DNA of 63,365 nucleotides, the filler included, from Octopus bimaculoides (lineage: Eukaryota): the NCBI RefSeq assembly GCF_001194135.2. It is 4 parts of 4 records of this genome, joined end to end, with 100 filler letters (N's around TTAATTAATTAA, not from the genome) between each part and the next. Parts side by side here need not be neighbours in the genome. Positions count along the whole stretch, not along the records: positions 1 to 30,210 come from NC_068994.1; 3 more parts are not named here. One strand, 5' to 3'. Below, one piece after another: positions 3,549-24,409 of this stretch. Under the pieces are notes generated by a model that was given only the letters and a program-made list of their open reading frames with translations, made no database searches and had not been told where the DNA came from. A program made the translations under genes and the position numbers. How positions within the stretch are numbered: the stretch's first letter is position 1; every line of letters starts with the position of its first letter.

Positions 3549-4789
3549 TATTTCATTAAATATTGGCCATTAAGGCCTTACAAAGAGGGGCAAACAAGGA
3601 CAGACAAACGTAAAGTAGCTGCGGGCTGGACACGGACATTAATGAGATGAGGGTGATAACAAAAAAGGTTGAAATAAAAATGGGAGGGGCACCGGCGCCC
3701 ACCGACCGATAACCCCTCGCTACTTACCACACAGCCACTCCTGCGCTTATGTGTATTTTTTTTTTAAATTATGGTTGGTGGTATAAAAGGAAGTCTTTCC
3801 AGCACTGCGAAGTAGAACTGAACTCTTTACCAAATGGTTGAGAAGCAAGCTTATTACCACACAGTCACACCTGCGCCTATATAAAGAATAAAATAAAATA
3901 AAACCGTTTTCCTACATTTTAGAAATGTTCGTTTCAGTTCTTTCAGATAGAGAATTAGTCCTTTATGACGTCAAGTAATTAACGTTCTCTTTGAATAACG
4001 ATTCTTCTACCATTTAAATATAAAGATAGGATTTTCGTAAAGAGAAAAACTTAGGAGAGATTTCACTCTTTTGAAATGTTTCTATTATGACGTAATAATC
4101 ATTCCATTTTCTTTACAAACCCCCCACCACACTTGTTTACTTTCTTATTTCATATCTACAATGCTTCAGTAGACACTAACATAGGAATCATATATATAGG
4201 CTTGTGTCTTGTCTATCGAATCCAAGATAACATTCAGGTGTTTCGCCAACCGTATGAATGAATGTTAGATAGACAAGAAAGATAACCTACAATCAGCAAA
4301 CACACTTAACACATTTAATAATCGCAAAAACACATCAACCATCTTTAATAATTGGTTTGCTAATCTGGGTAAGGGTTTTTCCTCTCTTTGCTTAAATGGA
4401 CAGAAACGCAAATACGAACGCGGTTAATACTCGCTATTTCACACAAATACCTATGTATCTGTGTGTCAGTTTATATTTCTGCATGTACACACACACGTAC
4501 ACACGCACACATAGATACTTCGAAATTTCGGCTTACTGGCCGTCATCAGACTTCGAAAAATCACGTTGCCTTGTAAAAATGATGTAGTGTCTGTCATATG
4601 CACATACATAAAGGAGCCTTGGGTCTAGGTTACGAACCAACTCTTTCTCTCTTGGCAAGAAATCTTGAAATAAAACTTAATAATGGCATACATGCATCTA
4701 ATTACATATCTACAAGCGTACATACATGTGTGTATATATGGAGAGACAGAGAGAGCAAGAAAGAAAGGAAGAAAAAGTGTGATATTCTT

Positions 4790-5357: not shown

Positions 5358-5802
5358 TTTTGTAGTTCTGTTTCCATGCTGTGTTTCTTCTTTTTTTTTA
5401 ACTATTTCTGCTATTTTCATCTCTGATAACCTGTTGTATCAATATAGTTTGTTTCGGTTTTATATTTTGTCGCCTCCTTGTGTATAGAGAAAATCGTTTT
5501 CGTTTGTTCGTGTTGCTTCATTACATTTTGTAGTCTTCTGATTCTAGTTTTTAAATACACTTTTAGTCCAACTGTTGGTATTTCGTAGTAATTTTCTACA
5601 ATGTGTCAAGCCACGGCCTCCTTCAGAGCGAAGTCGATATATTTTGTGCGTGTCTGCTTTGGGATAGTAACTTCGGTGTGTTGTTTTCTGGTTTTTCTAA
5701 CTTTCTCAATTCACTGATCTTCCAGCTCATTATGCTGAAGCTGTAATTTATGATTGTTATGGCTAGCGTGTTTATCCATATTATCTTATTTTTAGCATTG
5801 AG

Positions 5803-5803
5803 T

Positions 5804-5864
<61 letters not shown>

Positions 5865-5877
5865 TATTATTATTATT

Positions 5878-5909
<32 letters not shown>

Positions 5910-6075
5910 TAGAAGAAATCATTATTATTATTACGTCATAATCATTGTCGTCGTCGTCATCATCATCATCATCATCACCACCATCATCATCATCATCATT
6001 ATTATTATCAGCAGTAGGAGCAACATCATCATCATTTTATTATTATTATTATTATTATTACCATCATCGTCATCA

Positions 6076-6154
<79 letters not shown>

Positions 6155-6156
6155 CA

Positions 6157-6187
<31 letters not shown>

Positions 6188-6859: not shown

Positions 6860-7348
6860 CATTATATATATTTCTCTTTCTGTCTCTCTTTCTTCTATTT
6901 CTTTCTCTTTCTGTTTCTCTCTTTCTCCCTCACTCTCATTCTCTCTCTCTCTCTCTCTCAATTTCTCCCACCCTCTATCTCTCTCTCTAACTATCTCTTT
7001 CTCTCTCATATACACACACGTACATATATGCATGCACACATGCATTCTCTCTTTCTCGCACATGTGCACATAAAATCTGTCTGTCTCATGCACACATTCA
7101 TACACTCAAATGCGCACACGCACACTCATACACACATACACGCGCACACACACATACGCATACAAATAATAAAGAGGAACAAAGCTATATTAAATACCAT
7201 ACAACATAAAATATGGTCCACAACTGAGAACGAAATAATCTCTTCAATTATTTAAAATATATCCTAATACAGTTCTATATTTAAGAGATGAGGAATTATG
7301 TACATTATTTACATTTGACGGATATTTCTCCTCATCTTGTTTGATGTT

Positions 7349-7394
7349 AACACAACGTTTCGGCTGATATACCTTCCATCCTTCATCAGGTGTC
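7349..7394 (-). ncRNA. minimal type I hammerhead ribozyme
   Basis: GACAC-CUGAUGA-A-GGAUG(loop)CAGCC-GAA-ACGU-U/GUGUU: intact core, stem I GACAC/GUGUU, stem II with one mismatch, palindromic ACGU helix III. Confidence 0.75.
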
Positions 7395-7454
7395 TTGGGG
7401 AAATTTCGAACCTGGGTTCTCATTCCTAAGGTATTTTTCGATGTTATTATTATT

Positions 7455-7528
7455 CAGGTCATTGTTTGGAATCGAACTCGGAATTTTGGGGTTAGTAGCC
7501 CACGCTTTTAACCACTACACCATATGCC
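7455..7528 (-). promoter_or_regulatory. tRNA-derived internal Pol III promoter (A and B boxes)
   Basis: Minus strand GGCATATGGTGTAGTGGTTAAAAGCGTGGGCTACTAACCCCAAAATTCCGAGTTCGATTCC: A box TGGTGTAGTGG, B box GAGTTCGATTCC; not a complete cloverleaf. Confidence 0.7.
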
Positions 7529-7557
7529 CGTGGGCAATTATGGAGTGAATTTTAGGG

Positions 7558-7818
7558 CTTATAAATCTAATATTCTCCTATCCTTCTTTAATACCGGTTC
7601 CCATATGTTATTCATATCTGCACTCGGTCTGCTTAGGAGGTTGTTGTGTCCTAACATATGTGCTGCTCCTTTTAGTTTTCGTTTTTTCCAGTGGTGTTCT
7701 GTCTATTATTTTAACTTCATCCCACAGGGGGAGGCGGTCTCCATTTTTTCCATTCATGATCAGCTATACCCGATTTATCAATATCTACTCGTGTCACAGC
7801 TTTGCGATGTTCTTCTAC
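7558..7818 (-). pseudogene. PLE GIY-YIG endonuclease C-terminal fragment (two frameshifts)
   Basis: VEEHRKAVTRVDIDKSGIADHEWKK / GDRLPLWDEVKIIDR / EHHWKKRKLKGAAHMLGHNNLLSRPSADMNNIWEPVLKKDRRILDL*; fits the R..EH...S.IA.H...H...WD...I..E...R...EA pattern of Penelope/Poseidon-type EN. Confidence 0.8.
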
Positions 7819-8261
7819 CCTGATGAAGACTGGAGGTTATATCAACCGAAACGTTGTGCTAACAACAAACAAGATGAGGACAAATATCCGTCAAATTAAT
7901 TTAAATAACGTATATCCTAATAGTTCCTGGCTGTTGACAAACACGCTTTACAATGTCATGTTTAATAAAGTATTAGTTCTCTATAATTCTTATGGATTAA
8001 TTTACAGAAACGGCAGTAGATTGGCTGAAACATTTTGCAGTATTTACTGTTTCACTGTTTTCTTTCTGAGATAAAATCTAGTCGAATTTGATATTTATTC
8101 CTCCAAAACATTACCTATACAGTAAATTACTAGCCAAGCGGAACGACAAAATTCAAAATCGACAAAGTTGGGATTTGAATTCAGAAAAATCAAGGGAGAT
8201 AACTGAATGCCTCAATCTATTTTATTAGGGCTCTCTTGACTCTGTCATAATATACAAAGAC

Positions 8262-8296
<35 letters not shown>

Positions 8297-9439
8297 TAGT
8301 GATAGTGTGTATGTGTGTGGGTACATGTTATTCTATTATTATTTTACTTGTTTCAGTCATGTGACTTCGGCCATGCTGGAGCACCACGTGCGCATGTGTG
8401 CGTTGATGTATACGCGTGTATATGTGCGCGTTTGTGTATGTTTTTGTTTGTGCGTGTATGTGTGCGTGCGTGGGTGTCTATAATGTGTGTATGCGTGGGC
8501 GTATGTGTGTGTGTGTGTGTGTATTTGCGAGCGCAAGTGTACGTCGGTGTCTCTAACATGTGCACGTGCGCGCGCGTGTTTGTGTATGTGTGTGTGTGTT
8601 TGTGTGCGTACGTGTGTATGTATATGTCTATGTCTGCGCGTGGGTTTGTGTGAGTGCGTGTTTGTATGTGTGTGTGTGTGTGCATGTATACGGCTGTGTG
8701 TAAGTGTGCTTATGTGTGTGCGTGTGTGTGTGTTTATGTGGGGGTGTATGGGGTGGTGTTGTACATTTTAAAAAATGTCTGAACACGAAGACAGCAACCG
8801 CTGCTACGGACATATAATGTATATCCACGATACACGTTGGCATAGCAACCGTTGTTGGGGTCTTGCTGGGTGTTTGTGAGGTCATCTCTGAGAATATTGG
8901 GGGCGGGTGTTTACAGATGAAATAACAGACTGTGAAGACGGTTGGTTATATATATATCATGTTGAAGACCTCGTTTAAACTATGTTGGNNNNNNNNNNNN
9001 NNNNNNNNNNNNNNNNNNNNNNNNNNNNNNNNNNNNNNNNNNNNNNNNNNNNNNNNNNNNNNNNNNNNNNNNNNNNNNNNNNNNNNNNNNNNNNNNNNNN
9101 NNNNNNNNNNNNNNNNNNNNNNNNNNNNNNNNNNNNNNNNNNNNNNNNNNNNNNNNNNNNNNNNNNNNNNNNNNNNNNNNNNNNNNNNNNNNNNNNNNNN
9201 NNNNNNNNNNNNNNNNNNNNNNNNNNNNNNNNNNNNNNNNNNNNNNNNNNNNNNNNNNNNNNNNNNNNNNNNNNNNNNNNNNNNNNNNNNNNNNNNNNNN
9301 NNNNNNNNNNNNNNNNNNNNNNNNNNNNNNNNNNNNNNNNNNNNNNNNNNNNNNNNNNNNNNNNNNNNNNNNNNNNNNNNNNNNNNNNNNNNNNNNNNNN
9401 NNNNNNNNNNNNNNNNNNNNNNNNNNNNNNNNNNNNNNN

Positions 9440-10065: not shown

Positions 10066-10420
10066 ATAGGCGTAGGCGTGGCTGTGTGGTAAGAAGCTTG
10101 CTTCCCAACCACATGGTTCCGGGTTCAATGTCTTCTACCATAGCCTCGGATCGACCAAAGCCTCTTCCTGGCACCAACACGGCTCCAACAGTCGAGTGAT
10201 ACTTTTTATCTTTTATCTTTTGATTGATTTAGTCATTAGACGGCAGCCATACTGGGGCACCGCCTGAAAGAATTTTTAGTCGAATGAATGGAGCCCCAGT
10301 AACTATTTGTTATTTAAGCCTGGTACTTATTCTATCGGTCTTTGGCCGAACCGCTAAGTTACGGGACAGTAAACACATCAACAACGGTTGTCAAGCGGTA
10401 GTCACACACACACACGCACA
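10066..10420. mobile_element. SINE family A fragments: forward head then reverse tail
   Basis: GGCGTGGCTGTGTGGTAAGAAGCTTGCTTCCCAACCACATGG head; minus-strand tail 10195-10420. Confidence 0.75.
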
Positions 10421-18304: not shown

Positions 18305-18800
18305 AGGCACAGGAGTAGCTTTGTGGCAAGAAGCTTGCTTCCCAATCATATGGTTTCGGGTTCAATCCCACTGCGTGGCACCTTGGGCAAGTGTCTTCAA
18401 CTATAGCCCCAGACCAAAGCTTTGTGCAGTGAATACATTGGTCTGTCCCCTGGAGGCCTCACAGGTTTAGGGACCCAATTCTGATATCTATATTTACCGT
18501 GGCTTACTGTCAATAAATATTACAGGGCCCGTTGCTATAAACCTGCTACGACAGCCCTGGCTTTGTGAGTGGATTTGGTGGACGGAAACTGGAAGAAGCA
18601 CGTCGTCTACATATATCCGCGTTTGTCCCCCATCACTGGTGTTGGTGCGTTCACGACCACCTTAAGTTAGCGGTTCGGCCAACGGAGGCGAGTAGAATAG
18701 CAACCAGGCTTTGAAAATAAATTTAGTACTGTGGTTCATTCGTTCGCCTGAAATTCTTCAGAGCAGTGTCCCAGCATAGCCGCAGTCTGATGATTAAAAC
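18305..18800 (+). mobile_element. SINE family A interrupted by a hAT-type insertion
   Basis: Head at 18305, body resumes after 18567, tail CCAGCATAGCCGCAGTCTGATGATTAAAACAAATAAAA. Confidence 0.8.
18427..18559. mobile_element. 133-bp non-autonomous hAT-type element
   Basis: CAG...CTG termini; perfect 8-bp TSD GCTTTGTG at 18419-18426 and 18560-18567. Confidence 0.75.
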
Positions 18801-19619: not shown

Positions 19620-19945
19620 TAGGTGTAGGTGTGGCTGTGTGGTTAGAAGTTTGCTTCCCAACCACAAGATCTCAGGTTCAGTCCCATTACGCAGCACCTC
19701 GGACAGCTCCCAGGTCAATCAAAGTCTTCTGAGTGGATTTGGTACAAAACTGAAAGAAGCTCAGCATGTGTGTGTGTGTGTATATATCTTCTCCCCATTG
19801 CTTGACAACTGGCAGTTTGGCAAAAAGAGGACAATAAAATAAAATACCAGGCTTAAAAAAAAAAATGTGCTGGGATTAATCTGCTTGACTAAACCCTTTA
19901 AGTTGGTGTCCTGGCATAGCCGCAGTCCACTGACTGAAACAGGTT
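19620..19945 (+). mobile_element. SINE family A, diverged full-length copy
   Basis: Head GGTGTGGCTGTGTGGTTAGAAGTTTGCTTCCCAACC; tail GCATAGCCGCAGTCCACTGACTGAAACAG. Confidence 0.8.
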
Positions 19946-20661
19946 AAAGATAAAATCAATATTTATGAACTTGCTTACAATTAAAACCTGCAAGATCTTT
20001 TTTTTTTTTCCTTTTACTTACAAGCTCTAGCTTTTGATACCGCTATATCAGTAGTTTTTTGTTGTTGTTGTTGTTTACTGTTACTATAAACATATGTGTT
20101 GTTGTTTATTTATACTAACACACATGTATATACAAGTTTGTTTACCTGTTACTATTTATTGTTTTACCTTGTCTCTATAGTTTTCATATTGAACAACTGG
20201 TACAATGACTGATCAAAACAATAACAAAGGACTCTCTCTCTCTATCTCTATTTCTTTCTATCTAGCTCTCTCTATCTTATCTATATCTCTATCTATCTAT
20301 CTATCTCCCTCTCTATCTAGTTCTCTCTATCTCTCTCTCTCTCTCTCTCCCTCTATCTATTTATCTATCTGTCTCCAAACTATCTTTCTCAGACTACCAT
20401 TGTCATAACAAACAATTGTGACATTGTGTCACAGTTAGATATTACCATTATTATTATTATTGTTACCAGTGCTCTTTCAAGAGTTGAAGACTAGGCCTTG
20501 GAATTAGTGTGCACTACACTCTTGGTAAACACTGCCATCTAGTGTGCCATAACTATTGAGGGCTGGTGACATTTTGCATTTGAACTCTGAGTGTAAAGAC
20601 AAATGGATGTTGTTAAACATTTTGTCCAATGTGTTAACAATTCTGCCACCTTGCTACCTTC

Positions 20662-20694
<33 letters not shown>

Positions 20695-21092
20695 TTATTC
20701 TTTTATTGACCACAAGGGCTAATATAAACAAACATAAAGGACATGCAACAACATAAAAGACAATACAATTCAATGGGTTTTCACATTCATGCACACAGTA
20801 AGTAACAGATAAAGATTAAACAATAAAATCTCCTAATAGGGGCAGGTGCTTTAAGGTTACTCATAGAAAAACCTACAAAAGCCATGGATGCCTGACCAAG
20901 AGGGCAAGAGGCCTTCTTTTTTTTTCTCAAATAATGGTTTCAATCTTTGGCACAAGGCCAGAAAGTTTGTGGGGAGGAAGTAAGTTGAGTACACTGGCCC
21001 CAGTGCTCAACTGATACTTACTTTATCAATTCTGAAAAGCAAAGTCAGCCACAGCAGAATTTGAACCCAGAATGTAAAGACAGATGAAATGC

Positions 21093-21203
21093 TACATTAC
21101 TTACATTTGACGGATATCTGTCCTCATCTTGTTTGTTGTTAACACGTTTCGACTGATATACCCTCCAACCTTTATCAGGTGTCTTGGGGAAATTTCGAAC
21201 CTG
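21093..21203 (-). mobile_element. 3' fragment of the hammerhead-bearing PLE-terminus repeat, core mutated
   Basis: GACAC-CUGAUAA-AGGUUG...CAGUC-GAAACGUGUU; same tail as 7300-7410; sits among SINE fragments. Confidence 0.8.
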
Positions 21204-21634
21204 TCAGAAACTCTGTGTGTGTGTATATATATGTCTATGTTTGTTCCCCATCACCACTCCTGCTTGACAACCAGTATTGGTTAGTTTACATCCATGTAAC
21301 TTAGTGGCTCAGCAAAAGAATAGATACCAGTGGTAATTTGTTATACTGAATTGTCCAAGGCATACTTGGCTACTCATCAGGCCGAAGATACCTTAATTTT
21401 ATGAAGGTTACATTGTCGTTAAGGAATCCCAGGTTAACTCACCTAAGTTATAGTTATTTCAGCCTGATGAATAGCTTAGCTAAGTACTTCTCATTGAGTG
21501 ATTATTACATAAAAGAATTTGCTAGCTAGGAAACATATGTAGACTGAATTTTACCTGCTCCACTCCCTCAATTTGGGCTTTTATTCACATACATAGCAAC
21601 TCTAGTTGCTAATCGTGAGTTATAAAAAACCTTT

Positions 21635-24359: not shown

Positions 24360-24407
<48 letters not shown>

Positions 24408-24409
24408 TT

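What the first reader, a model, noticed from the sequence alone, without database searches (positions are those of the whole stretch)
7258..7922. Penelope-like element whose 3' terminus is a tRNA-derived Pol III promoter plus a hammerhead ribozyme, captured as one TSD-bounded insertion
Seen in sequence: a perfect 12-bp direct repeat (TATATCCTAATA, 7258-7269 and 7911-7922) brackets the whole composite. On the minus strand it reads: inverted copy of the tail, GIY-YIG C-terminus ending in TAA near 7558, about 30 nt, tRNA-like A/B-box head, (AAT)n, hammerhead, tail. Established: PLEs encode RT plus GIY-YIG, often leave inverted partial terminal repeats at 5' truncations, and carry minimal hammerheads in their terminal repeats. 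Inference: the tRNA-like promoter is an integral part of this PLE's terminal repeat, not a later SINE insertion. Pol III could then make a short self-cleaving RNA from the element's own end, which would spawn SINE-like derivatives. I am not aware of this being described for cephalopod PLEs, but I cannot check the literature.
Basis: partly seen in the sequence, partly recalled or inferred. Interest (0 to 1): 0.88.

Follow-up and report, generated by a model that had tools for sequence, protein, structure and literature searches.

The report
Penelope retrotransposon carrying tRNA-like module
This is a dead, front-truncated copy of an octopus Penelope-like retrotransposon whose family carries a tRNA-like, promoter-type sequence between the end of its gene and its hammerhead ribozyme; that could let short copies behave like SINEs, but no activity has been shown.

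Summary
A perfect 12-bp direct repeat (7258-7269, 7911-7922) brackets a 641-bp insert. On the minus strand the insert reads: inverted tail, decayed GIY-YIG C-terminus (two frameshifts, TAA 7561-7559), 29 nt, a tRNA-like segment, (AAT)3, a PLE-type minimal hammerhead, and a 42-nt tail extension.

It is one old, 5'-truncated Penelope-like element insertion, probably made by priming from both target strands.

The same order, ORF end then tRNA-like segment then hammerhead, recurs in:
- an independent Octopus vulgaris insertion;
- a metagenome scaffold;
- four copies of a diverged sister family (about 72% nucleotide identity in the endonuclease).

Chance nesting of a SINE is therefore excluded.

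The segment has A and B boxes 44 nt apart (none expected by chance). It does not fold or score as a tRNA with ARAGORN or Rfam.

Pol III transcription, self-cleavage and SINE-like offspring remain untested. A single minimal hammerhead is not expected to cleave alone.

I found no description of a tRNA-like module inside a PLE in the held literature; Repbase and Dfam could not be checked. Verdict: a new variant of a known kind, of moderate interest.

The parts
7258..7269 (.). Target-site duplication, left copy (TATATCCTAATA)
   Evidence: Only two matches in the window. It directly abuts the element's 3' end, which is defined independently by other copies.
7911..7922 (.). Target-site duplication, right copy
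   Evidence: A looser 27-nt direct repeat (7243-7269 and 7896-7922, 78% identity) hints at a longer, imperfect duplication or at AT-rich chance similarity.
7270..7311 (-). 42-nt 'tail' extension (TAAATAATGTACATAATTCCTCATCTCTTAAATATAGAACTG), present at the 3' end only
   Evidence: It is absent from the inverted arm of this insertion. In L001 the situation is reversed: the extension is on the inverted arm and absent from the 3' end. This matches the one-ended 30-40 bp PLE tail (PMC8557442) and the two RT start sites of PAc (PMC11167929).
7312..7348 (-). Post-hammerhead tail ending ...AATATCCGTCAAATG; the short-form element end falls just after it
   Evidence: Conserved in all octopus-type copies. 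Its 5' arm GAUGAGGAG pairs with UUCCUCAUC in the extension, forming a hairpin.
7349..7394 (-). PLE-type minimal type I hammerhead. Layout: GACAC / CUGAUGA / bulged A / GGAUGG-loop-UCAGCC / GAAA / CG / U U, cleavage, GUGUU. Predicted cleavage lies between 7354 and 7353.
   Evidence: Core nucleotides are intact. Helix II is paired in 89% of cells across 11 copies, with one U-A to C-G double change between families. Slid controls pair in 15-48% of cells. The features match PMC4209133. No Rfam hit.
7399..7413 (-). AGGTTCGAAATTTCC motif (B-box-like), the 5' boundary of tail-only copies
   Evidence: The second copy in the window starts here (21210). Tandem units of the sister family also start at the homologous motif.
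7446..7454 (-). Internal (AAT)3 microsatellite
   Evidence: Read directly. It is expanded to hundreds of bases in another copy (L001).
7462..7529 (-). tRNA-like segment. A box at 7522-7512, B box at 7478-7468, starts 44 nt apart.
   Evidence: Box test: 0 of 100 shuffles reach this. It is homologous to the same segment in L001, L002, L003, L004, L010 and L011. No tRNA call by ARAGORN or Rfam.
7530..7558 (-). Conserved pre-head spacer (GCCCTAAAATTCACTCCATAATTGCCCAC). With the stop codon it forms the motif TTTATAAGCCC...
   Evidence: Aligned across both families at 62% between-family identity, against 39% for the unalignable spacer.
7559..7818 (-). Decayed C-terminal part of the PLE GIY-YIG endonuclease ORF (RVEEHRKAV...IWEPVLKKDRRILDL, stop at 7561-7559)
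   Evidence: 71% amino-acid identity to P0001 and P0002. About 90% DNA identity to L001 and L002, with +1 and -2 frameshifts. Relatives lie downstream of RVT_1 reverse-transcriptase ORFs.
7819..7910 (+). Inverted short-form copy of the tail. It carries a hammerhead core (CUGAUGA 7820-7826, GAAA 7848-7851), ends ...CCGTCAAAT at 7896, and is followed by 14 nt (7897-7910) of uncertain origin.
   Evidence: The junction with the EN sequence at 7819/7818 shows GG microhomology.
21093..21210 (-). Second, tail-only copy of the same element: no tRNA-like segment, G8-to-A core mutation, 3-nt deletion
   Evidence: 90% identity over 114 nt. The sequence begins right after a (CA)n run.

Best explanation
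Positions 7270-7910, read on the minus strand, are one old, dead, 5'-truncated insertion of a canonical (C-terminal endonuclease) Penelope-like element of an Octopus-type genome.

How it inserted. It went into AT-rich DNA by target-primed reverse transcription. Both strands of the staggered break primed cDNA synthesis on the element's RNA. One cDNA started at the distal RT start site and ran about 550 nt, up into the endonuclease gene. The other started at the proximal start site and ran about 80 nt. The two were joined head to head at a GG microhomology. This left the inverted tail, a tail extension at one end only, and a 12-bp target-site duplication.

The tRNA-like segment. The segment between the ORF stop and the hammerhead is not a nested SINE. 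It is an inherited, lineage-wide component of this PLE's post-ORF region, the region that forms the pseudo-LTR in tandem copies.

Inferred function. The segment most likely acts at the DNA level as a type-2 (A box plus B box) Pol III promoter or TFIIIC-binding site. If so, any truncated copy that keeps the last roughly 280 nt could be transcribed from within, from about 7533 to the TTTT at 7257-7254. The resulting RNA still carries the RT start sites and could be mobilised in trans like a SINE. The hammerhead would need a second copy or the PLE protein to cleave.

My probabilities for the three layers: single PLE insertion, about 0.9; segment integral to the lineage, about 0.85; real Pol III or SINE-generating function, about 0.35.
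For: Shown:
- TSD and inverted arms.
- EN homology and frameshifts.
- RT ORFs upstream of the EN in relatives.
- All published PLE minimal-hammerhead features, and preservation of helix II across 11 copies with one compensatory change.
- Long versus short ends distributed as expected for two RT start sites, in both the window and L001 (PMC11167929).
- Top- and bottom-strand cleavage and extension by a purified PLE protein is published.
- The two arms differ at about 13-15% of positions, and each differs from the majority of octopus-type copies at only 4-5 of 78 positions (read). That fits one event followed by decay.
- The same ORF-stop, tRNA-like, spacer, hammerhead order is present in L001 (independent flanks and truncation point), in L002, in L003, L004, L010 and L011, and in the inverted copy in L011.
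- Between-family identity is 57-62% in the pre-head and head regions, against 39% in the unalignable spacer and 72% in the EN coding sequence.
- A and B boxes with tRNA-like spacing do not arise in shuffled sequence.
- There is no T4 run between the head and the end of the element, and TTTT lies 12 nt past it (read).

Inferred: twin priming; promoter function; SINE-like mobilisation.
Against: - ARAGORN and the Rfam tRNA model find nothing, even on 141-291 nt slices.
- No fold of the segment is shared between copies.
- In the sister family each box has two mismatches, a level that chance gives about twice per window.
- The head is the least conserved of the alignable segments.
- Only three octopus-type and four sister-family ORF-linked copies were seen. 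No full-length element or upstream pLTR was obtained.
- The 30-kb window has no second copy of the head, and no clean SINE-length copy starting at the head was found.
- The predicted Pol III RNA has no special stability, and its hammerhead helix II is not in the minimum-free-energy fold.
- A read-through RNA would bury both hammerheads in a roughly 90-bp hairpin.
Confidence: 0.62

Rival explanations
1. Passenger relic. An ancestor of these PLE families captured a tRNA-derived SINE head once, for example by template switching between a SINE RNA and PLE RNA. The head has since been carried along as non-functional 3' UTR sequence, and the boxes persist only by descent.
For: The head is the least conserved alignable segment (57% between families, against 73% for the hammerhead and 72% for EN coding). 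The boxes have drifted to two mismatches each in the sister family. The octopus family has lost about 20 nt relative to the sister family. No SINE-length offspring were found.
Against: The segment has been retained in every ORF-linked copy of two families that differ by 28% in the EN nucleotide sequence. The invariant columns in the head fall largely within the A-box and B-box stretches (T..TA..GG..GCG..GG and GTTC.A).
Confidence: 0.25
2. Not tRNA-related at all. The segment is a PLE-specific cis element, such as a Pol II promoter of the pseudo-LTR, an RNA element bound by the PLE protein, or part of an upstream leader. Its box-like strings resemble A and B boxes by convergence.
For: No tRNA call by ARAGORN or Rfam on any of seven copies. 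No cloverleaf. PLE pLTRs are known to contain the element's own promoter (PMC6765202). In the Anolis element, cis signals and the ORF start overlap the hammerhead region.
Against: Two boxes, each one mismatch from consensus, with tRNA-like 44-nt spacing, were not produced by 100 shuffles. In L001 and L002 the A box is a perfect TRGCNNAGTGG. By my recollection only, the sister family's extra 20 nt sits where a class II tRNA has its long variable arm; this was not tested.
Confidence: 0.1
3. Chance nesting. An unrelated tRNA-derived SINE inserted into the 3' UTR of this particular PLE copy after it had landed, or the composite is two adjacent insertions.
For: The window is full of other tRNA-derived SINEs, so nesting is common in this genome.
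Against: The identical junctions recur at independent loci and in a sister family. No internal TSD flanks the head. The head has no 3' tail of its own. The 12-bp TSD encloses the whole composite.
Confidence: 0.02

Closest known systems
Canonical EN+ Penelope-like elements (Penelope/Poseidon type), including the biochemically studied Anolis element PAc
   Same: RT followed by a C-terminal GIY-YIG endonuclease. A minimal type I hammerhead near the 3' end. An inverted 5'-truncated partial copy. A 30-40 bp tail at one end only, explained by two internal RT start sites. A TSD of variable length. An AT-rich target (PMC8557442, PMC4209133, PMC11167929).
   Different: None of the PLE papers I could read mentions a tRNA-like or A/B-box segment between the ORF stop and the hammerhead. 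Clade assignment by RT phylogeny was not done. No CX2-5CxxC linker is visible upstream of the GIY motif in L002, which points to Penelope/Poseidon rather than Neptune or Nematis.
SMalpha / Sjalpha SINE-like elements of schistosomes
   Same: A short retroposon that combines a Pol III-type promoter with a hammerhead ribozyme (PMC6765202; PMC8490949).
   Different: SMalpha is a free, non-autonomous, often tandem repeat of about 335 bp with a canonical, active hammerhead. Here the promoter-like segment plus a minimal hammerhead sit inside the 3' region of copies that still carry the PLE ORF, and no free SINE family was demonstrated.
Animal non-LTR retrozymes
   Same: Non-coding units derived from PLE pLTRs that carry type I hammerheads and are presumed to be mobilised by PLE machinery (PMC7761336; bioRxiv 10.64898/2026.07.22.740005). 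Tandem units of about 123 nt from the sister family's tail exist in public data (P0130, P0133, P0140).
   Different: Retrozymes are tandem arrays that give circular RNAs, and no Pol III-type promoter is described for them. In the window the hammerheads are single and on opposite strands.
Cassandra, Helenus and Ajax (non-autonomous LTR retrotransposons with 5S- or tRNA-like sequences in their LTRs)
   Same: A small-RNA-gene-like, Pol III-promoter-type sequence embedded in the terminal repeat of a retrotransposon (PMC10886601).
   Different: Those are LTR-class and non-autonomous. Here the host is a Penelope-like lineage, and the copies carry RT and EN coding sequence.
L1 twin priming (5' inversions)
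   Same: Two cDNAs primed from the two strands of one target break and joined at microhomology, giving an inverted 5' segment within one TSD (my own knowledge: Ostertag and Kazazian 2001).
   Different: Here both cDNAs start at the element's own 3' RT start sites. The inverted part is therefore another copy of the tail, not an upstream segment. The exception is L001 4801-5300, which looks like classic internal priming at the (AAT)n run.

Membership tests
Penelope-like element (canonical, C-terminal EN+) | PLE-type reverse transcriptase upstream of the endonuclease in one ORF | tested here: inconclusive
   Absent from the window copy, which is truncated within the EN. In relatives L010 and L011, ORFs matching RVT_1 lie directly upstream of the homologous EN. 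No RT phylogeny was done.
Penelope-like element (canonical, C-terminal EN+) | GIY-YIG endonuclease with a CCHH motif whose two cysteines lie between GIY and YIG, plus R, H, E and N residues (PMC8557442) | tested here: inconclusive
   Close relatives show VYSIPCSCGRLYKDET...R..EH...H...E...N (P0001, P0002). The window fragment starts after the YIG motif and keeps only R-x-EEH, ADH and the N-containing end. The Pfam GIY-YIG model gives no hit at E<=0.01.
Penelope-like element (canonical, C-terminal EN+) | Inverted 5'-truncated partial copy and/or pseudo-LTR | tested here: met
   Inverted arms 7288-7390 and 7819-7921. The same feature is seen in L001, L004 and L011. No direct pLTR was seen.
Penelope-like element (canonical, C-terminal EN+) | [quoted passage not shown] | tested here: met
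   The 42-nt extension 7270-7311 is present at the 3' end and absent from the inverted arm. The arrangement is reversed in L001.
Penelope-like element (canonical, C-terminal EN+) | Target-site duplication of variable length in an AT-rich target | tested here: met
   12-bp TSD. A candidate 11-bp ATAATTTTAAA duplication flanks the L001 insertion at 2957-2967 and 3636-3646 (read).
PLE-type minimal hammerhead (type I) | Catalytic boxes CUGANGA and GAAA and a cleavage triplet ending in a non-G base | tested here: met
   CUGAUGA at 7389-7383, GAAA at 7361-7358, GUU then cleavage at 7356-7354. The core positions are invariant or nearly so in 11 copies.
PLE-type minimal hammerhead (type I) | [quoted passage not shown] | tested here: met
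   The bulged A is invariant. The G-C closing pair is present in 9 of 11 copies. The 6-bp helix II is paired in 89% of cells, with one U-A to C-G double change. Helix I is 5 bp in octopus copies and about 3 bp in the sister family. The ACGU palindrome is present. Covariation is not significant on its own (51 of 500 shuffles).
PLE-type minimal hammerhead (type I) | Match to the curated Rfam hammerhead models | tested here: not met
   No hammerhead hit at E<=10 on 2.2 kb, on 291 nt, or on five loci. This is expected for variants that lack helix III.
PLE-type minimal hammerhead (type I) | Self-cleavage (as a dimer or with protein help) | not testable with these tools
   Needs in vitro transcription and cleavage assays.
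tRNA-derived SINE (SINE2) head / type-2 Pol III promoter | A box (TRGCNNAGTGG) and B box (GGTTCGANNCC) at tRNA-like spacing | tested here: met
   One mismatch in each box, starts 44 nt apart, 0 of 100 shuffles. The A box is perfect in L001 and L002.
tRNA-derived SINE (SINE2) head / type-2 Pol III promoter | Recognisable tRNA ancestry (cloverleaf or covariance-model score) | tested here: not met
   ARAGORN finds nothing at 80% or more of its default thresholds. At 70% it makes calls in inconsistent registers. There is no Rfam tRNA hit and no shared fold.
tRNA-derived SINE (SINE2) head / type-2 Pol III promoter | Free copies that begin at the Pol III start site, lack coding sequence and have their own TSDs | tested here: inconclusive
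   None were found in the window or loci. Suggestive fragments only: a deletion derivative joining the head to the hammerhead, exonised in O. bimaculoides (P0123), and an inverted head fragment ending about 14 nt upstream of the head (L001). A genome-wide census was impossible with these collections.
tRNA-derived SINE (SINE2) head / type-2 Pol III promoter | Transcription by RNA polymerase III | not testable with these tools
   Needs RNA 5'-end data, Pol III or TFIIIC occupancy data, or in vitro transcription.
Non-LTR retrozyme | Tandem head-to-tail repeats, each carrying a hammerhead | tested here: not met
   The two hammerheads in the insertion are on opposite strands and the third copy is 13 kb away. 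Tandem arrays exist elsewhere for the sister family.

The most novel reading that the evidence does not exclude
An autonomous Penelope-like lineage carries a working internal Pol III promoter in its pseudo-LTR. Every truncated copy that keeps the last roughly 280 nt would then be a ready-made SINE with the element's own reverse-transcription start sites. This would be a built-in SINE generator. It would also explain how hammerhead-bearing SINEs such as schistosome SMalpha, and perhaps retrozymes, arise from PLE ends.
Probability: 0.3. Interest if true: 0.8.

Novelty: new variant of a known kind. Interest (0 to 1): 0.55.

Why it matters
SINEs are normally thought to arise when a Pol III-transcribed small-RNA gene happens to acquire the 3' end of an autonomous partner. 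Here the two parts already sit together inside ORF-bearing copies of the autonomous partner, in a class (Penelope-like elements) for which no tRNA-type SINE partnership is described in the papers I could search.

If the segment is a working promoter, it would:
- give a direct route from PLE ends to hammerhead-carrying SINEs and retrozymes;
- explain part of the very large pool of unclassified SINEs reported for octopus genomes (PMC13282606);
- make the still unknown role of PLE hammerheads testable in a short Pol III transcript.

If the segment is only a relic, it is still a useful annotation warning. Repeat maskers will split such copies into 'SINE/tRNA' plus 'PLE', and so miscount both.

Tried and rejected
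1. Rfam on the region, on five loci and on short slices gave no tRNA or hammerhead hit. The only hits were microsatellite-driven miRNA look-alikes and CRISPR-repeat noise.
2. ARAGORN gave nothing at normal thresholds. At thresholds relaxed to 70% it made calls in inconsistent registers, which I discarded.
3. Two exact-pattern scans of JGI metagenome contigs for the tail gave 0 hits and then 2 chance hits in bacterial contigs. There is no octopus DNA in that collection.
4. Scans for the EN profile in viral contigs and GTDB genomes gave nothing usable: one 33% match in a Ruminococcus MAG contig, not followed up.
5. A search with the peptide encoded across the tail was meant to collect more copies. 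It gave only three word-index hits. In the representative library it gave 53 hits, nearly all short (the one 475-aa hit is an unrelated repeat protein), and none is a long PLE protein.
6. I considered that the tail encodes the N-terminus of the PLE protein, as in Anolis PAc. The frame MRTQVRNFPKTPDEGW... is open in several copies. However, no ORF continues into PLE sequence, and by my own hand count from the sequences substitutions between families show no third-position bias. The idea is neither supported nor excluded.
7. Pfam does not recognise the PLE endonuclease, and PDB sequences gave no hit.
8. P0123's genomic locus could not be fetched because the gene range is too long. L008 starts inside the (AAT)n run, so its upstream part is unknown. 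L005 and L009 end or diverge before the region of interest.
9. Individual folds of the head region showed no shared structure.
Full report
**What is in the sequence**

The 12-mer TATATCCTAATA occurs exactly twice in the 30-kb piece, at 7258-7269 and 7911-7922, even when one mismatch is allowed. The chance expectation is 0.30. Between the two copies lie 641 bp. Their ends form a 103-nt inverted repeat, 7288-7390 against 7819-7921, that is 82% complementary; BLAST gives 84.5% over 97 nt.

Read on the minus strand, the insert consists of:
- 14 nt of uncertain origin (7910-7897);
- an inverted copy of the element's tail (7896-7819);
- a decayed open reading frame (7818-7562);
- a TAA stop (7561-7559);
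- a 29-nt spacer;
- a tRNA-like segment (7529-7462);
- (AAT)3 (7454-7446);
- an AGGTTCGAAATTTCC motif (7413-7399);
- a hammerhead (7394-7349);
- a tail ending ...CCGTCAAATG (to 7312);
- a 42-nt extension ending ...ATATAGAACTG (7311-7270).

The extension abuts the left copy of the 12-mer directly. The same ...AGAAC(T/A)G end is seen in two other copies. The boundary is therefore defined independently of the repeat.

**The coding fragment**

With two frameshifts repaired, the fragment reads RVEEHRKAVTRVDIDKSGIADHEW...WDEVKIID...KLKGAAHMLGHNNLLSRPSADMNNIWEPVLKKDRRILDL. It is 71% identical to two short predicted proteins, one of them from Octopus vulgaris.

Those relatives extend further towards the N-terminus and show VYSIPCSCGRLYKDET. 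That is a GIY...YIG motif with two cysteines in between, which is the hallmark of PLE endonucleases (PMC8557442).

At the DNA level the window is about 90% identical to L001 and L002. It has a +1 insertion near 7749 and a -2 deletion at 7699/7698.

A profile of the endonuclease end retrieved 861 relatives. In the contigs I fetched, the homologous EN lies just downstream of ORFs that match the RVT_1 reverse-transcriptase family.

Pfam's GIY-YIG model does not recognise these proteins. The endonuclease assignment therefore rests on motifs and context.

**The hammerhead**

Rfam's hammerhead models find nothing. The motif nevertheless has every feature that Cervera and de la Pena listed for PLE minimal hammerheads (PMC4209133):
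- CUGAUGA and GAAA boxes;
- an unpaired A between positions 9 and 10.1;
- a G10.1-C11.1 closing pair;
- a 6-bp helix II (GGAUGG with UCAGCC);
- a 5-bp helix I (GACAC with GUGUU);
- no helix III loop, only the palindrome ACGU.

Across eleven copies from two families the core positions are invariant or nearly so. Helix II is paired in 89% of cells, and one pair switches from U-A to C-G between families. Sliding the 3' partners drops overall pairing from 80% to 15-48%.

The covariation score alone is not significant (51 of 500 shuffles reach it). The case therefore rests on the full set of features rather than on covariation.

The 2014 paper already noted pairs of such hammerheads 100-700 bp apart on opposite strands. 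That is exactly this arrangement.

**How the insertion was made**

PLE insertions are known for three things: high 5' truncation, an adjacent inverted 5'-truncated copy, and a 30-40 bp tail at only one end (PMC8557442).

For the Anolis element PAc, Frangieh et al. showed that the protein cleaves and extends both DNA strands. Reverse transcription starts at two adjacent internal sites, and the tail is the sequence between those sites (PMC11167929).

The window fits this model. The 3' end uses the distal site and so carries the 42-nt extension. The inverted arm stops shortly after CCGTCAAAT, at the proximal site. In the independent O. vulgaris insertion L001 the two ends are swapped.

The inverted arm joins the EN sequence at a GG microhomology at 7819/7818.

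The two arms differ at about 13-15% of positions. Each differs from the majority of octopus-type copies at only 4-5 of 78 positions (read). That is what one event followed by roughly 5-6% decay per arm would give. An intact 12+12 bp duplication is compatible with that age.

I conclude that this is a single, old, twin-primed, 5'-truncated PLE insertion. The twin-priming step is an inference.

**Is the tRNA-like segment part of the element?**

It was not refuted.

- L001 (O. vulgaris OX597819.1) has different flanks, its own candidate 11-bp duplication, and a truncation point about 50 nt further upstream in the EN gene. It shows the same series: stop, TTTATAAGC-type spacer, GGGCATGTGGCGTAGTGGTTAAGAGCG..., (AAT)n, GGTTCGAAATTTCC, hammerhead, tail.
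- L002, a 621-bp scaffold whose ORF reaches back into the RT-EN linker, continues after its stop into the same spacer and head.
- A diverged family in ENA assembly ERZ21867824 is 56-70% identical in EN protein and about 72% in EN DNA. It has the homologous arrangement in four of four copies (L003, L004, L010, L011) and in the long inverted copy of L011.

Between the two families, identity by segment is:

| Segment | Between-family identity |
|---|---|
| Hammerhead | 73% |
| EN coding sequence | 72% |
| Pre-head spacer | 62% |
| Head | 57% |
| Unalignable middle spacer | 39% |

No internal duplication flanks the head. Nesting of a SINE into this particular copy is therefore excluded. The segment was already present in the common ancestor of these families.

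**Is it tRNA-derived, and is it a promoter?**

The octopus head has an A box (TGGTGTAGTGG, perfect in L001 and L002) and a B box (AGTTCGATTCC) with starts 44 nt apart. With at most one mismatch per box, the window contains two such pairs, against none in 100 Markov shuffles. The other pair is the head of an unrelated SINE.

The invariant columns of the two-family alignment fall largely within the two box stretches.

Against this, ARAGORN and the Rfam tRNA model find nothing on any copy, even on 141-291-nt slices, and the copies share no fold. The sister family's boxes each have two mismatches.

The sister family also has about 20 extra nucleotides where, by my recollection only, class II tRNAs carry their long variable arm. 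That is a lead, not a test.

The segment thus qualifies as a type-2 Pol III promoter look-alike. Its tRNA ancestry and its activity are unproven.

If it were active, transcription from about 7533 would meet no T4 run until the TTTT at 7257-7254, just past the duplication. The product would be an RNA of about 280 nt that includes both RT start sites, the requirement for mobilisation in trans.

That RNA has no unusual stability (z = +0.4), and its hammerhead helix II is not in the minimum-free-energy fold. Minimal hammerheads cleave only as dimers or with protein help.

A read-through transcript of the whole insert would instead fold the two arms into a roughly 90-bp hairpin (-205 kcal/mol, z = -9.6).

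**Do SINE-like offspring exist?**

I could not run a genome census. The public collections available here hold almost no octopus DNA.

The window has a second, tail-only copy (21093-21210, 90% identity) that begins at the GGTTCGAA motif. It has no second copy of the head.

There are two suggestive fragments:
- An O. bimaculoides gene model, dystrobrevin beta isoform X1, has an N-terminus encoded by the first roughly 25 nt of the head fused directly to the hammerhead (P0123).
- In L001, an inverted head fragment ends about 14 nt upstream of the head, next to an expanded (AAT)n run.

Neither is decisive.

**Comparison with what is known**

Everything except the tRNA-like segment is textbook PLE anatomy.

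Pol III promoter plus hammerhead is known from the schistosome SINE-like SMalpha and Sjalpha elements. PLE-derived non-coding hammerhead repeats are known as animal retrozymes (bioRxiv 10.64898/2026.07.22.740005). Small-RNA-like sequences inside terminal repeats are known for LTR-class Cassandra, Helenus and Ajax.

I found no paper describing an A/B-box or tRNA-like segment inside the post-ORF region of ORF-bearing PLE copies (searches; full-text term checks for SINE, tRNA or Pol III). Repbase and Dfam entries for octopus could not be consulted, so prior curation there cannot be excluded.

**Verdict**

- It is a new variant of a known kind.
- Interest is moderate, at 0.55. It would rise to about 0.8 if Pol III activity and SINE offspring were demonstrated.

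Noticed in passing
window 10079-10132, 18316-18369, 19632-19685, 27677-27730 (+ strand): Heads of a different, abundant tRNA-derived SINE family, with A and B boxes 43 nt apart. Their bodies and tails (…GTGAGTGGATTTGGTAGACGGAAACTGAAAGAA…) are unrelated to the PLE tail.
   Followed up: partly
window 27660-28010: Two copies of that other SINE lie tail to tail in inverted orientation, forming a long palindrome.
   Followed up: no
P0123 (Octopus bimaculoides dystrobrevin beta isoform X1, GCA_001194135.2): The predicted N-terminus MPMGIWHSGEGWRVYQPKCCVNNKQDEDKYPS is encoded by a deletion derivative of this element, with the start of the head fused to the hammerhead. This is an apparently exonised copy used as an alternative first exon. 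The locus DNA could not be fetched.
   Followed up: partly
P0130, P0133, P0140 (representative protein library): These ORFs read through tandem repeats of about 41 aa (about 123 nt) of the sister family's GGTTCGAA-hammerhead-tail unit. They are retrozyme-like arrays, and their unit begins at the same motif where the window's tail-only copy begins.
   Followed up: partly
L001 4801-5300 (O. vulgaris): A tail copy is preceded by several hundred bases of (AAT)n/(AAC)n and then by an inverted fragment of the head. It looks like internal priming at the element's own microsatellite.
   Followed up: partly
window 7271-7423 (minus strand): A 51-codon frame, MRTQVRNFPKTPDEGWKVYQPKRCVNIKQDEEKYPSNVNNVHNSSSLKYRT, is open from 31 nt upstream of the CUGAUGA box to the end of the element. 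It is also open in several other copies. In Anolis PAc the ORF starts at the hammerhead. No continuation into PLE protein was found here.
   Followed up: partly
window 7270-7910 (minus strand): A read-through RNA of the whole insert would form a roughly 90-bp, near-perfect hairpin from the two arms (z = -9.6). That is a plausible double-stranded RNA substrate in an animal known for heavy RNA editing (speculation).
   Followed up: no
window 7312-7345 with 7283-7291 (minus strand): A 9-10 bp hairpin, GAUGAGGAG with UUCCUCAUC, brackets the short-form end of the element. This is reminiscent of the stem-loop at the RT start site of PAc.
   Followed up: no
window 6900-7160, 8260-8300, 5800-6180, 20660-20700, 24360-24410: Dense microsatellites surround the insert: (CT)n, (CA)n, (TG)n and many (AAT)n runs. 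PLEs are reported to favour microsatellite and AT-rich targets.
   Followed up: no
window 27489-27521 (minus strand): A 33-nt fragment resembles hammerhead helix II (85% identity), with no flanking element sequence. It is probably a remnant or chance similarity.
   Followed up: no
L012 (MAG Ruminococcus sp. JBJEOX010000036.1): A weak (33%) match to the PLE endonuclease profile in a 4-kb contig of a bacterial MAG. It may be host contamination or may be unrelated.
   Followed up: no
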